Source of the DNA: Gekko japonicus
Lineage: Eukaryota
Assembly (NCBI RefSeq): GCF_001447785.1
Contig: NW_015170904.1
Span: forward strand, 242,877 to 306,876
DNA length: 64,000 bases
Direction: 5' to 3'
The position numbers and the translations under genes were made by a program. This document shows, one piece after another, positions 5,648-33,804 of this stretch (the first letter of the stretch is position 1; each line of letters opens with the position of its first letter). The notes under the pieces were generated by a model. That model had not been told where the DNA came from and searched no databases. It saw nothing but the letters and a program-made list of their open reading frames with translations.

Positions 5648-6646
5648 CCCAATTTGTCAAACTTCCTGGGTAGTTTAAACAACACTAGTTAACTGTTGCA
5701 GTTAAATAACCCAGGTCAACAGTCTTTAAAAAGTGGGGATAAGAATGACTGTATTCTTTAAAATACAGCTCACTTATTTGTGTTATAGTAACATCCCCAT
5801 CCCCTACTCATTTTAGCTGGAGATGGACCATTCCTGATATCAGCTAGAATCAAAATGTGGTACCTTTAACAGACCTTACAGGCACAGAACCCTTTTCAGT
5901 TCTGAAGTTATTTTGAATGGTAAATAAATCATAGAAGCTTGAATATCAAAATAACCAAATAAAAAGAGACAGGGGTCCAAAAGATGATTTCTTGGTTCCC
6001 CCCCCCTGCTTTGTAAGCTCAATGGGTTAAAAAAAATGGAGAAGTTTTTTTAAGGGCTTCTGATTTTTTTCAATGCAGTTCAATGAAAATATCATAGAAT
6101 TACATTGCAATCATTGTCATATCGGGGTAAGCAGAAGAGTGTACTATATGCCTTAAAACACTATCAAGAGAGAAAGTGAGGTTCTAACTTTAATAAATAC
6201 CTATCCCTAAGGAACCCATTCAGTGCATAAGAACTTTCTTGCAAAATAGAGGGAGACTGCACACGTGTAGTTTTTGTGTGTGTACATTTTTCTTTTCTTG
6301 GCTTGTGGCTAAAAATGAACTTCAGGAAGAGTGGGAAGGGGACAGAGTGAAAAAGTGTGAAGACTTAGGTTTATAAAAATACTAGGAGCAATGCCCTTTG
6401 TGGGAAGAAATACAACGAGATCTCGAAGGAAGCTCCAGATGAGTGTCCCGACTGTGGCTGGTGGGGCGGCAGAGGGAAGCGGAAAATGGAGGGAGGCAAG
6501 CCATGTTTCTTTCCTCCTGCTTAGCTATAAGGCAGGGCTGTCTCAAGTCATTTTGCTGCCCCAAGTGGGTAGAATGGGAGGACAGCCTCATGGTAACAGA
6601 TATGGTTCTGTCCACCTCTGACTTATTTTTTGAGGGGGAGGGGGGT

Positions 6647-7241
6647 GCTATGCAGTGGCAGCTAAGGTAGAAAAGAACCTCCTCCTATGCCATGTTTTCT
6701 GGGTTCCAAGGGTATGGAAAGTAGTTCCATAGCTGATTACACAGTTGCCAACTCTGGGTTAGAACATACCTGTAGATTTGAGGGGTAGAACCTGGGGAGG
6801 GCAGGGTTTGGGGTGGGGAGGGACCTCAGCAGGGTATAATGCTATAGAATCCACTGCCCAAAGCAGCCATTGTCTCCAGGAGAACTGATCTTGGTCATCT
6901 GGACATCAGTTTTAATAGCTGGAGATCTCCAGGTGCCGCCTGGAGGTTGGCTTATGTTAATTTGGGGCTATGCAGTCACAGCTAAGGTGGAAAAGCACCT
7001 CCTCCTTTGCCACATTTTCTGGGTTCCAAGGGTCTGGAAAGTGGTTCCATAGCCGATTACACGGTTGCCAACTCTGGGATGGGAAATACCTGTAGATTTG
7101 AGGGGTAGAGCCTGGGGAGGGCAGGATTTTGGGTGGGGAGAGACTTCAGCAAGGTATAATGCCATAGAATCTACTGCCCAAAGCAGCCATTGTCTCCAGG
7201 AGAACTGATCTTGATAATCTGGACATCAGTTTTAATAGCTG
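6647..7241 (+). repeat. Diverged ~275-bp direct repeat (6647-6921, 6967-7241; period 320) inside element A
   Basis: GCTATGCAGT...GGGTTCCAAGGG...GTTGCCAACTCTGGG...GGACATCAGTTTTAATAGCTG occurs twice. Confidence 0.9.
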
Positions 7242-7656
7242 AAGCCATGACTGCTACGTCACATTGGCTGTCATACAGGGGCCATCTCAGCAGGATATAA
7301 AGACACAGAGTCCACCATTTTCTCCAGGGGAACTGATCCCTGCCGTCTGGAAAGCAGTTGTAATTCTGAGTGATCTTCAGCCCTCACCTAGAGATTTACA
7401 ACCATGGTTTCCCCGAAGAGACACTAAGGGAAAATNNNNNNNNNNNNNNNNNNNNNNNNNNNNNNNNNNNNNNNNNNNNNNNNNNNNNNNNNNNNNNNNN
7501 NNNNNNNNNNNNNNNNNNNNNNNNNNNNNNNNNNNNNNNNNNNNNNNNNNNNNNNNNNNNNNNNNNNNNNNNNNNNNNNNNNNNNNNNNNNNNNNNNNNN
7601 NNNNNNNNNNNNNNNNNNNNNNNNNNNNNNNNNNNNNNNNNNNNNNNNNNNNNNNN

Positions 7657-8610
7657 TATACGCAAGGGGGGCCCCCGCGTCCCCGCGGGGGGGGGGGGAG
7701 GCAGAGGAGGAAGCAGCAGGAGGGGGTAAGTGCCCCCCCATCCTGCTGGTTCCCCCCTGTCCTCCACCCCCCTCCATTGCCTCTCCCCCCCAGCTCCTCT
7801 TCCCCCCGGGGCACTGAAGCCAGGGGCATTGAAGCTGTTTCCCTCCCCCTCCCCCCTCCCAACCTGGCAATGAAGCCAGGGGCGAGCGGAGAGCCGCTCG
7901 CCCCTCGCTGTTTCCCTCCCCCCTCCCCCCTTCCAACCCGGGGGCCCTCCCCTCTCCCCCAGACCCGGCAGCGGCTCCTCCTCCTCCTCTCGGGCTCGGC
8001 ATGGTGGCGGCGGCCCCCGGAGCCAGGACAGGCAGCGAGACGGCGACTGGCCCGCCGCCGGCAGCAGCACCTCTGAGCCGCTCGCCGGCCTGCCGCCCCG
8101 AGAAGCAGGCGGCGAGGCCGGTCCTTGCCCTCCCTGCTGGCTGGCTGGCTGGCTCCCCCCCGCCCCAAGAAGGCGGAGGCGGCGGCGGCGGCAGCTCCTT
8201 GGCCTCGCTGGCTCTCCCCCCGCCCGCCGGCCCGCCCGGCCGCCCTGAGACGGAGGAGGAGGCGGCGGCAACGGCTCCTTGACCTCGCTGGCCCGCTCGC
8301 CCCGAGAAGGCGGTGGTGGCGGCGGCTCCTTGCCCTCCCTCCCTCCCTGCCGGCTGGCTCGCTCCCTCCCTCGCTCGCTCGCTCCGAGGAGGCGACACAG
8401 CGGCGGCGGCGAGGCCAGCTGCAGAGCGTCTTCTGCGCATGCGCAGGAGACGCTCTTGCACTTTCGGGGGGATTTAAACATCCCCTCGAAATTTTTTTTA
8501 ACTTTTTTTATTTTTGTGCACACGTGGGGACTGGCCCACGTGTGCACAAACCTCCCCCTCCCCCCCAGCTGCCCCCTCCGTGCTGATTTAGCGATCCGCA
8601 CGGAGGGGGC
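7657..8610. other. CpG-island-like GC-rich segment ending in four consecutive hairpins; probably TE-borne
   Basis: Very high GC/CpG with GGC runs; hairpins at ~8421-8459, 8462-8491, 8513-8550, 8570-8610; abuts a Helitron-type TC terminus at 8633. Confidence 0.7.
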
Positions 8611-31228: not shown

Positions 31229-31435
31229 TAGGGTTGCCAACCTCCAGGTGGGGTTTGGAGTTCTTCCTAAATTACAGCTGCTGTCCAGACTACAGAGATC
31301 ATTTCCCCTGGAGAAAATTGCTGCTTTGGAGGGTGGACTCTATGGCATTAATACTTTACTGGGGTACTCCCCTCCCCTCCCCAAGCTCCACCCCCAAATT
31401 GCCAAGAATTTCCCATTCTGGAGTTGGGAACCCTA
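31229..31435. mobile_element. Short TAGGGTTGCC-terminated MITE
   Basis: TAGGGTTGCCAAC ... GTTGGGAACCCTA; internal ATCA(G/T)TTCCCCTGGAGAAAAT motif shared with many copies in the window. Confidence 0.75.
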
Positions 31436-32330
31436 TTTGAAAAGTGATCTAAAGGATTAAAAGTATGTGAACTTATCACCCAGACTAGTTTCTTATCCTG
31501 CGGTGTTAAAATTAGTGGGGGGTTGAGCTTGAACTTTCATTGTGAAATACTTTGGGAGGAAGTTGTTATAGTCCTACTTCCAGCTCTTGCTACTTCCTAG
31601 GAAGGCTAGGGTTAGAGTACCACTAAAGGTATTAATTGCTCTTTTGGGTTGCTTAGCTCTGCCTTGCTTAAATTGTAGCTTTGAATGTGGATAAAAGCAA
31701 CAGGGCAGGGACAAATATGACTGCAGTAACAGTAGGAAGAAAGAGGGATGGATTTGGAGGGCCAACTGTGTCTGTATCTTCAAATAAGTATTGTGGCATT
31801 GAATTTCTTCCAAGGTACTGAAGGCTACACAAAATACTCACTTGTTCAGTCTAGAGTTTGTAGAACTGGGGGGAAAGTATTATCATAATCATGATGCTTT
31901 AATAAATGTAAAGGAATCTAAATTTCCACTGAAGATTTCTTGGGTTTGATGTACGTGTTAGAAACAAAGGCAAACTCCCATGTCTTATTAATAAACATAT
32001 ATAAATTATCCTCTCCTATTGGGCTGAAGATTAGTCCTTATTCTGATATTGTCAAAAGCTAGAACAAAAGAGTAAAGAAAAGTTTCAAATGTGAAAAACG
32101 CAGGATGGCATGTTATGTACGTTTTAGATTGGGAAGCACATTGCTGAAACCCTGGAATACAAGGAGCTGCATAACCTCAGGGATTGGTGCTCTAATGTGG
32201 AGGCTTTCCTTTCTAGGTCAACAGTTACTGTCTTGTCCTCTTTGCCAGTAACTAAGAGTAATTTTTTAAAAATCTGATGCCTGCTTGATTGCCTTTTTGA
32301 TCACAACCCAGTTCTCAGATTATATTATTC

Positions 32331-33804
32331 CTAGGAATAAGGCCCGTGGGGGAAATAACTACAATGGGCTCTAGAAAGAGAACATAAAATAAGAACAGGA
32401 TATAAGCCAATATTGGATCAGGCCAATGGCCCATCCAGTCCAACACTCTCTCACACAGTGGTCAAAAATACCAGGTGCCATCAGGAGGTCCACCAGCGGG
32501 GCCAGGACACTAGAAGCCCTCCCACTGTTGCGCCCCCAAGGCTCTGGGTGGGTGCCCCGACCTTAGGCTCTCAGTGTTAATTTGAATTGGTGACCTCAGC
32601 AATGACACAGAGTCTACTGTTTCTCCAGGGGAACTGATCTCCGCCATCTGAATAACAGTTGTAATTTTGAGTGATCTCCAGCCCCCACCTGGGGATTGGC
32701 AACAATGGTTCTCCAGGAGGAAATGGCTGGTTTGGAGGGTGGAATTTATGGCATTGTACCTGTCTGCAATCGCACCCCTCCTCAAACTCTCTCCAGGCTC
32801 CACCCCTCAAATCTCCAAGAGTTTTCCAACCTGGAGTTGGTAACCCTATCTCCTTCCCAGCCAACCATCAACGTACTGTTATCTGCCCCCCTGACTTCAG
32901 GTTTCTATCTCCTCCCCCCTCCCTGCAGCTTCTATCTAGGAAAAGTACAATCTTTCTCTGCAGTGGGGACCAGAACAGCTCTCATCATTCTCCTCTCCCC
33001 CTTTTGATCTGCACAATAACCCTGTGAGGTAGGTTAGGCTGAAAGTCTGTGAGTGGTCTCAAATCACCCAATCAGCTTCCACAGGAAAAACCTGGGTCTG
33101 GCAGACCCTGACATGAAGCGCTAACTGCTATGTCACACTCGCTGTCATGGGGGGCCACCTCAGCAGGGTATAATGACACAGAGTCCACCATTTTCTCCAG
33201 GGGAACTGATCTCTGCCATCTGGAGAGCAGTTGTAATTCTGAGTGATCTCCAGGTCTCACCTGGAGCTTGGCAACATTGGTTATCCAGGAGGAAAAGTTC
33301 AGTCTTTCTTCGCAGTGGGGACCAAAGCAACGCGCATCATTCTCCTCTCTCCCTTTTGATCTGCACAACAACCCTGTGAAGTAGGTTAGGCTGAAAGTCT
33401 GTGACTCGTCCGAAATCACCCACTCAGCTTCTATAACAAGAACCTGAGTTTGGCAGACCCTGCTCTGCAGCACTAACTGCTACGCCACACTGGCTGTCCT
33501 GGGGAGGCTGCTGCTGGTGAACAGGAACAAGCAGCCTGGCCTAGCTAAGTCATGCCAGTTAGGTGTCATCAAGTCACCCAGAGGGTGCTGCTAGGCCTAG
33601 GGTAGCCAACCTCCAGGGGGATGCAAACCAAACACTTCCTCAAGCCCAGCACATCTAATGATTGCACAGACCCATTTTTAAATGTTTACTTTTCAAATCT
33701 ATCATAGGTGCTCCAAGTACTTGCTCGTACCAGAAACACTACCAAATCATGGGTGTGTGTGGAGCACTTTCTGGTTTTTTTCCCAAATAATCTTGTATAT
33801 TTGA
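32331..33804 (-). mobile_element. Non-autonomous Helitron-like element B
   Basis: Minus-strand 3' end GCCCATTGTAGTTATTTCCCCCACGGGCCTTATTCCTAG (CTAG at 32331-32334; the flank base is C rather than the expected A); candidate 5' end A|TCAAATATACAAGATT at 33804, 13/16 identical to the 5' end of element C. Confidence 0.75.
32381..32538 (-). mobile_element. CR1-type 3' fragment nested in element B
   Basis: Matches 17848-18000; absent at the homologous position of element C, where ...CTAGAAAGA|GGCTTTGGG... is contiguous. Confidence 0.8.

What the first reader, a model, noticed from the sequence alone, without database searches (positions are those of the whole stretch)
6382..33804. Three dispersed Helitron-like elements share one 48-nt hairpin+CTRR 3' terminus but have different 5' ends and different cargo
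Seen: read 5'->3' in element orientation, the ends are C (24245-24292,+) CTTTCTAGAGGTCGTTATATTTATTTCCACAACGGGCCTTATTCCTAA|T; B (32331-32378,-) CTTTCTAGAGCCCATTGTAGTTATTTCCCCCACGGGCCTTATTCCTAG; and A (6382-6429,-) CCTTCGAGATCTCGTTGTATTTCTTCCCACAAAGGGCATTGCTCCTAG|T. They align without gaps. No single copy has an intact stem, but the consensus GC(C/T)CGTTGT-10-nt loop-ACAACGGGC ends 11 nt before a terminal CTAG. Each element has an AT-rich TC start preceded by A (23100, 33804, 8633) and no TSD. Established: 5'-TC, a subterminal hairpin, 3'-CTRR, an A|T target and no TSD define rolling-circle Helitrons. Inference: a non-autonomous family at high local density (3 copies in ~27 kb), with a conserved terminator and swapped 5' starts. 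A standard repeat masker would probably fragment these into unrelated MITE/SINE pieces.
Basis: partly seen in the sequence, partly recalled or inferred. Interest (0 to 1): 0.8.

Follow-up and report, generated by a model that had tools for sequence, protein, structure and literature searches.

The report
Shared 3' end of lizard repeat
The three look-alike 48-letter pieces are the decayed 3' ends of one old repeat family with several thousand copies; the end looks like a rolling-circle (Helitron) terminator, but the three long "elements" drawn around them are patchworks of unrelated repeats, so this is ordinary repeat annotation.

Summary
The three 48-nt pieces are real and homologous. A model built from B and C alone finds A at E=3e-7.

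Reads of the same species laid at 80% likeness show about 4,000-8,000 copies. High-similarity homology stops within about 6 nt of the claimed CTRR end. The majority letters in the reads restore a 9-bp stem that ends 11 nt before CTAG, the spacing reported for Helraiser. A Helitron-type 3' terminus is therefore a reasonable reading (about 0.45).

- **B and C are not different cargo.** Once a later 158-nt CR1-like insertion in B is removed, they are colinear for about 550 nt. That body is made of halves of a very abundant TA-flanked MITE.
- **B and C share sequence past the end.** They match at 22 of 28 nt beyond CTRR.
- **A is a fragment.** It shares only 67 nt with B and C.
- **The TC 5' ends are what chance gives.** There are 1-2 such sites per 2.2 kb.
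- **The spans are mosaics.** Copy number within span C ranges from about 80x to 9,800x. Span A also holds a CpG island and an assembly gap.

No RepHel ORF, TSD or empty site could be shown. An end of ...TTCC plus TA is not excluded. The scan holds other unchecked Helitron notes for this genome, none on this sequence.

The parts
24198..24292 (+). Copy C, 3' tail module of the family (about 95 nt).
   Evidence: Read depth is about 6,000-7,800 against a single-copy depth of about 1.5. Unrelated to the MITE's own 3' part.
23970..24197 (+). Copy C, family body made of two rearranged halves of the abundant MITE: part 1 up to about 24059, part 2 about 24060-24197. 23893-23980 is a 126-nt-period partial duplicate of 24019-24106.
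24293..24323 (+). Flank of C that is still homologous to the flank of B (22/28 identical). It is near single-copy genome-wide.
   Evidence: Depth is about 5 in bin 24304-24357.
32331..32380 (-). Copy B, last 50 nt of the tail, ending CTAG and followed by G.
32381..32538 (-). Later insertion in B of a CR1-like 3' fragment, a copy of 17847-17997 at 88%. It splits B's tail and created the apparent left edge of the 48-mer in B.
32539..32848 (-). Copy B, start of the tail plus the MITE-derived body (part 1 and part 2), colinear with C 23744-24244. It begins TAGGGTTACCAACTCCAGG.
32849..32902 (-). 5' extension upstream of the MITE-type end in B. It matches the consensus of the loose read ends before 23744, so many genomic copies carry it. 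The true family 5' end is not fixed.
32301..32330 (-). Flank of B that is homologous to the flank of C.
6382..6448 (-). Copy A, a 67-nt 3'-terminal fragment of the family ending CTAG|T. There is no significant homology further upstream.
23465..23614 (-). Truncated copy of the canonical TA-flanked MITE (ends TAGGGTTGCCA...TGGCAACCCTA), about 7,700-8,900x. About 3,000x read depth continues to about 23665, which is the 5' extension.
   Evidence: Full copies with TA at both ends lie at 31229-31436 and 45356-45552.
23744..23878 (+). Partial copy of the same MITE. Thousands of reads and contigs start at 23744.
23100..23170 (+).
   Evidence: No other copy in the window.
7657..8460 (-). CpG island inside claimed element A (GC 0.75; CpG o/e 0.82 over 8000-8460), with GCGCATGCGC and a Kozak-like ATG. 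It is read here as a host promoter or first exon; whether it is Helitron cargo was not tested.
7436..7656 (.). Assembly gap inside claimed element A. Continuity across it is unknown.

Best explanation
The 48-mer is the last half of a roughly 95-nt 3' module of one old, abundant, short non-autonomous repeat family, with about 4,000-8,000 copies at 80% likeness or more in this species.

The family body upstream of the module is built from two rearranged halves of a still more abundant Tc1/mariner-type MITE. That MITE has TA on both sides and ends in TAGGGTTGCCA...TGGCAACCCTA.

The 3' module carries a 9-bp hairpin with a 10-nt loop, an 11-nt spacer and CTAG. It lacks the MITE's inverted repeat. 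Cut-and-paste by the MITE's transposase therefore cannot explain the amplification (inference). The most likely mechanism is rolling-circle (Helitron-type) transposition, with the hairpin plus CTAG acting as terminator.

In the window, C and B are two copies of the 3' 320-550 nt of this family. B was later split by a CR1-like insertion. A is a 67-nt 3' fragment. B and C also share about 31 nt beyond the end. This points either to a local inverted duplication made soon after insertion or to a read-through (3' transduction) variant.

The long 'elements' with TC 5' ends are not units. They are nested or adjacent repeats of other families and, for A, a host CpG island.

Shown: homology, copy number, the position of the boundary, the consensus hairpin, the colinearity of B and C, and the mosaic make-up.
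Inferred: the rolling-circle mechanism and the origin of the B/C flank.
For: - Homology of the three pieces.
- Genome-wide depth of about 6,000-7,800 across 24196-24292 falls to about 5 in the next bin. The plateau calculation puts the end at 24289-24300.
- The read-majority letters at 24255 and 24261 both restore stem pairs. The fold is -6.7 kcal/mol, z=-3.9.
- The 11-nt spacer and CTAG match Helraiser, whose palindrome lies 11 nt upstream of a CTAG end. Its hairpin works as terminator, and read-through transduces flank (PMC4778049).
- The tail has no similarity to the MITE's own 3' part.
- All three 3' flanks start with 11-12 A/T in 12 nt, and T follows CTRR in A and C.
- No TSD of 10 nt or more, no tRNA-like head and no Rfam family.
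- B and C are colinear, and B has the majority letter at 10 of 13 places where C is private.
Against: - No conserved 5' end (TC, left terminal sequence) was found for the tail family. B has no copy of C's 23100-23170 repeat.
- That repeat is about 10 times rarer than the tail.
- B is followed by G, not T.
- The boundary is known only to about 6 nt either way. All three copies read ...TCC|TA, as expected if the element ended in CC with a TA target duplication like the MITE.
- B/C homology runs past the end.
- No RepHel ORF in the window.
- No empty site could be examined.
- Only three copies could be read letter by letter.
Confidence: 0.45

Rival explanations
1. The family is not a Helitron. 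It is a derivative of the TA-targeting MITE, or of another DNA transposon into which the MITE inserted. It ends ...CCTTATTCC and is followed by a TA target duplication. The hairpin and the CTAG reading are incidental.
For: - The body is MITE sequence, and the canonical MITE copies are TA-flanked and end ...CCC|TA.
- All three tail copies read TCC|TA, and the base after TA is A, G, G.
- The depth boundary (24289-24300) cannot separate 24289, 24291 and 24292.
- B is followed by G rather than T.
Against: - The tail shows no similarity to the MITE's 3' inverted repeat, so the known ends for cut-and-paste are missing on one side. Yet this form reached thousands of copies.
- The two majority letters in the reads both restore the stem, which suggests the hairpin was a feature of the source copies.
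- The hairpin geometry matches Helitron terminators (PMC4778049).
Confidence: 0.27
2. The tail is the 3' module of a retroposon, a SINE-like chimera mobilised by a LINE. The hairpin is then the reverse-transcriptase recognition stem, the AT-rich stretch after CTAG is a degenerate tail, and copy A is a 5'-truncated insertion.
For: - A is a 67-nt 3' fragment, as is typical of 5' truncation.
- All three copies have a 12-13-nt stretch that is all or nearly all A/T right after the end.
- The consensus stem has one G.T pair, which would be a G.U wobble in RNA.
- The family sits among Sauria-type SINE and CR1-like fragments.
Against: - No TSD of 10 nt or more within 3 kb.
- No tRNA-like or other Rfam head.
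- The AT-rich stretch is neither poly(A) nor a microsatellite.
- In B and C the AT-rich stretch is homologous and is followed by further shared sequence.
Confidence: 0.1
3. B and C, and perhaps A, are not independent insertions. They are products of a local, partly inverted, segmental duplication of one insertion with its flank. This would explain three copies in 27 kb. This rival concerns the origin of the local copies and is compatible with any family type.
For: - B and C share about 550 nt of composite body in the same order, plus 22/28 nt past the family's genome-wide end.
- Flank identity (79%) is about equal to element identity (about 80%).
- The expected density of the family is about 0.1-0.3 copies per 27 kb, against 3 observed.
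- The flank is near single-copy genome-wide.
Against: - Flank homology stops after 31 nt.
- B does not share C's private changes, so any duplication was early.
- A's flank is not significantly alike (p about 0.12), and A's upstream sequence is unrelated.
- A read-through Helitron variant would give the same picture (PMC4778049).
Confidence: 0.35

Closest known systems
Non-autonomous Helitrons of the Helibat/Helraiser type (PMC4778049; family rules in PMC2997563)
   Same: - Asymmetric ends with no inverted repeat at the 3' end.
- A subterminal palindrome ending 11 nt before a CTAG end.
- AT-rich flank with T after the end in 2 of 3 copies, and no long TSD.
- Thousands of short copies carrying foreign sequence.
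- Families are defined by the last 30 nt. Read-through can add flank, which is a possible origin of the B/C extension.
   Different: - No conserved TC 5' end was found.
- The stem is AT-richer, with a 10-nt loop; Helraiser has a 19-bp palindrome.
- No RepHel partner was seen.
- The boundary is known only to about 6 nt either way.
- One copy is followed by G.
Tc1/mariner-type MITE of this genome (ends TAGGGTTGCCAAC..CCAGG, TA on both sides, about 200 bp, about 8,000-9,000 copies)
   Same: The body of the tail family consists of two halves of this MITE. Both end in CC followed by TA.
   Different: The tail family has lost the 3' inverted repeat and carries an unrelated 95-nt module in its place. 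Many copies also carry a roughly 50-nt 5' extension outside the MITE end.
LINE-mobilised SINEs of squamates (Sauria-type SINEs, CR1-tailed SINEs)
   Same: Short, abundant, with a 3' stem-loop module and 3'-only fragments such as copy A.
   Different: No Pol III-type head, no TSDs, and no simple-repeat or poly(A) tail.

Membership tests
Helitron (rolling-circle transposon) | 3' terminus CTRR at the point where copies stop being alike | tested here: inconclusive
   The copies end CTAA, CTAG, CTAG. Genome-wide read depth falls from about 7,650 to about 5, with the end placed at 24289-24300. This fits 24292 but does not single it out. B and C stay alike for 31 nt more.
Helitron (rolling-circle transposon) | Short palindrome (hairpin) about 10-12 nt upstream of the 3' end | tested here: met
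   With the read-majority letters, a 9-bp stem and 10-nt loop ends 11 nt before the end: -6.7 kcal/mol as DNA, z=-3.9. The stem is decayed in each single copy.
Helitron (rolling-circle transposon) | Conserved 5' end starting TC (left terminal sequence, essential for transposition) | tested here: not met
   The three proposed TC starts share no significant similarity and occur at chance frequency. Only C's coincides with a repeat edge, and that repeat is about 10 times rarer than the tail and absent from B. The family's real 5' end could not be fixed.
Helitron (rolling-circle transposon) | Insertion between A and T without target duplication (empty-site evidence) | not testable with these tools
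   T follows the end in A and C, G in B. No direct repeat of 10 nt or more was found. The single read-laying run did not list a joint across the element in the related species. A contig of organism B stops matching at 23111, which is suggestive only.
Helitron (rolling-circle transposon) | Autonomous partner encoding RepHel with the same ends | not testable with these tools
   The window has no ORF of 130 aa or more that is not repeat or gap sequence.
Tc1/mariner-type MITE | Terminal inverted repeats at both ends with a TA duplication | tested here: not met
   Met for the canonical MITE copies. The tail family's 3' 95 nt has no similarity to the inverted repeat, although TA does follow ...TCC in all three copies.
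SINE / LINE-dependent retroposon | Pol III-type head, 3' simple-repeat or A-rich tail, and variable TSDs | tested here: not met
   No tRNA, no Rfam head, no TSD, and no simple-repeat tail.

The most novel reading that the evidence does not exclude
A lizard Helitron family that assembled its body from two halves of a Tc1/mariner MITE and then reached several thousand copies. It would keep one hairpin-CTAG terminator while pairing it with several different left ends, and it would leave read-through variants such as the B/C extension. That would make it a natural example of 3'-end-defined family evolution with exchange of the left end.
Probability: 0.12. Interest if true: 0.4.

Novelty: new member of a known kind. 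Interest (0 to 1): 0.2.

Why it matters
The main value is for annotation. The result gives a tested 3' boundary and a consensus hairpin for an abundant squamate repeat that maskers would probably split into a MITE piece and an unclassified tail.

If the rolling-circle reading holds, it would be one more case of a Helitron amplifying captured transposon sequence in a reptile. Helitrons have been reported at low copy number in reptiles (667 copies of HeligloriaB in Anolis, PMC2997563).

It does not open a new question. It also removes the more striking claim of three cargo-swapping elements at high local density.

Tried and rejected
- **More copies from public collections.** Two exact-pattern scans of metagenome contigs found nothing, one with the tail and one with the family-specific part 2.
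- **ORF word searches.** Searches with the ORFs that run through copies C and B were meant to pull in other copies via called ORFs. No candidate was found.
- **Paper search.** A full-text search for the terminal sequences gave 0 papers.
- **Earlier findings.** Look-ups by sequence were blank, and the look-ups by place and by words returned only unchecked first-reader notes.
- **Further tail copies in the window.** nhmmer found only A, B and C.
- **Unoccupied copies of the B/C flank in the window.** None.
- **Tail as a decayed MITE inverted repeat.** Rejected: no similarity.
- **C and B 5' ends as homologous.** 16/24 identical in register, but the local score equals the shuffle mean, so this is not accepted.
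- **A's flank as homologous to C.** p about 0.12, and only low posterior in the HMM alignment.
- **Rfam mir-16 hit next to C as a real miRNA.** Rejected: it is a 240-nt fold-back that hits many unrelated miRNA models on both strands.
- **Read-laying limits.** The one read-laying run did not list loose ends or joints at 24292, and it could not be repeated.

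
Full report
**Observation.** They align without gaps: C-B 40/48, C-A 36/48, B-A 34/48. The best unrelated 48-mer in the 64-kb window reaches 27/48. 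An HMM built from B and C alone recovers A at E=3.1e-7. nhmmer finds no fourth copy in the window. The homology is real.

**Assembly gaps.** Gap 7436-7656 lies inside claimed element A, between a MITE-derived block (7286-7418) and a CpG island. Gap 19439-19482 lies between A and C, next to a (CT)n run, and touches none of the elements.

**Genome-wide behaviour.** I laid raw reads of the same species (X21, about 1.5x single-copy depth on the left flank) and contigs of three runs on 22900-24500 at 80% likeness.
- Depth over the tail (24196-24303) is about 5,700-6,000 per bin, and 7,500-7,800 at 24255-24261.
- The next bin (24304-24357) has about 5, and the one after has 0.
- Taking 7,650 as the plateau, the bin mean puts the end at about 24289. 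Allowing for thinning of reads near an edge, the range is 24289-24300.
- At 24255 and 24261 most reads carry C and G where copy C has G and A. Both changes restore base pairs of the proposed stem.
- Copy C with these two letters folds as DNA into a 9-bp stem (one G.T) with a 10-nt loop, -6.7 kcal/mol, z=-3.9. The three actual copies fold no better than shuffles.
- The stem ends 11 nt before the end. Helraiser has a palindrome 11 nt upstream of a CTAG end, which acts as terminator (PMC4778049).

**What lies upstream.**
- Self-comparison and reading of the sequence show that B and C are colinear over C 23744-24244 / B 32848-32539, and again over 24243-24323 / 32380-32301.
- The only break is a 158-nt block in B (32381-32538). 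It is an 88% copy of 17847-17997 with a CR1-like 3' end, so it is a later insertion. It created the apparent left edge of the 48-mer in B.
- The shared body consists of two halves of a very abundant MITE. Full copies lie at 31229-31436 and 45356-45552. They have the ends TAGGGTTGCCA...TGGCAACCCTA with TA on both sides.
- Thousands of reads and contigs begin at 23744 and end at 23614 with unrelated flanks.
- The 95-nt tail (24198-24292) has no similarity to the MITE's own 3' part.
- In B, the MITE-type end is preceded by a stretch (32849 to about 32902) that matches the consensus of the loose read ends before 23744. Many genomic copies therefore carry this 5' extension. The family's true 5' end remains unfixed.
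- A shares only its last 67 nt (6382-6448). Nothing upstream is significantly alike.

**Past the end.**
- B and C remain alike for 28-31 nt after CTRR: 22/28 identical in the same register. Only 3-4 of 8,078 AT-rich windows score as well.
- A's flank is not significantly alike (p about 0.12; low posterior). All three flanks do start with a stretch of 12 nt that is all or nearly all A/T.
- Genome-wide this flank is near single-copy, and the window holds no unoccupied copy of it.
- At 10 of 13 places where C differs from the read majority, B has the majority letter. B and C therefore share no derived changes.
- Two readings fit: an early local inverted duplication of one insertion with its flank, or a read-through variant of the kind described for Helraiser.
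- Three copies in 27 kb against an expected 0.1-0.3 favours some local duplication.

**The claimed 5' ends and 'elements'.**
- Each 2.2-kb upstream stretch holds 15-24 A|TC sites and 1-2 AT-rich ones.
- The C and B starts are 16/24 identical in register, but the local score equals the shuffle mean.
- Only C's start coincides with a repeat edge. Depth rises from 1.5 to about 590 at about 23100-23113, and a same-species contig breaks at 23132.
- That repeat (23100-23170) is about 390x, ten times rarer than the tail. It is absent from B.
- Within the span of C, copy number runs 390x, 80-290x, 7,700-8,900x, 430x, 6,200-6,800x, 390-780x and 4,900-9,800x. This is a patchwork of separate families.
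- The span of A also holds a 320-nt tandem duplication. It holds a CpG island as well (GC 0.75; CpG o/e 0.82 over 8000-8460 against 0.24 for the window), with GCGCATGCGC and a Kozak-like ATG. That is most simply a host promoter.
- The window has no RepHel-sized ORF, no TSD of 10 nt or more, and no tRNA or Rfam head.

**Reading.**
- The 48-mer is the 3' end of one old, abundant, short non-autonomous family whose body is captured MITE sequence.
- The 3' end lacks the MITE's inverted repeat but carries a hairpin, an 11-nt spacer and CTAG at a sharp genome-wide edge next to AT-rich DNA. A Helitron-type mechanism is therefore the best single explanation (0.45).
- It is not established. The 5' TC end, the A|T target, empty sites and a RepHel partner are all untested or unmet.
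- An end of ...TTCC followed by a TA duplication fits the three copies equally well (0.27).
- A retroposon tail is less likely (0.10).

**Known or new.** I could not compare with Dfam or Repbase. A family of this abundance in a sequenced lizard is probably in automated libraries already. At most it is a new member of a known kind.

**Earlier notes of the scan.** The notes on this genome mention other putative Helitron families, none on this sequence and none checked.

Noticed in passing
window 24806-25047: A near-perfect fold-back palindrome of about 240 nt. It gives an Rfam mir-16 hit above gathering score on both strands (24888-24965) and weaker hits to many unrelated miRNA models, plant ones included. 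It contains TAGCAGCAC, the miR-15/16 seed, but nothing else of those miRNAs. It is probably a palindromic MITE and a false miRNA call.
   Followed up: partly
window 7657-8460 (- strand): A CpG island (GC 0.75) with a GCGCATGCGC palindrome near 8440, a Kozak-like gccgccaccATG at about 8001, and four GC-rich hairpins at 8421-8633. It looks like a host promoter and first exon next to an assembly gap. The gene was not identified.
   Followed up: partly
window 31229-31436, 45356-45552, 23465-23614, 23744-23878, 6744-6951, 7063-7236: A very abundant MITE of about 200 bp (about 8,000-9,000 copies by read depth), with ends TAGGGTTGCCAAC..CCAGG and TA on both sides. A subfamily carries a roughly 50-nt extension outside the 5' end.
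   Followed up: partly
window 33504-33290 and 33152-32938 (- strand); 7272-7239: Two Sauria-type SINE copies 352 nt apart, each preceded by the same MITE half ('part 2'). The same part-2/SINE-head junction recurs at 7240-7418. This is either a composite family or a local duplication.
   Followed up: no
window 9-326: A perfect (100%) tandem duplication of 159 nt at the start of the window. It is either very recent or an assembly artefact.
   Followed up: no
window 6647-7241: A tandem duplication of a 320-nt unit (90% identity) that contains a MITE copy, inside claimed element A.
   Followed up: no
window 26461-26784 and 44899-45222: A 324-nt direct repeat at 94% identity, much younger than the families discussed here.
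   Followed up: no
This could be an empty site or a different insertion. It could not be read.
   Followed up: no
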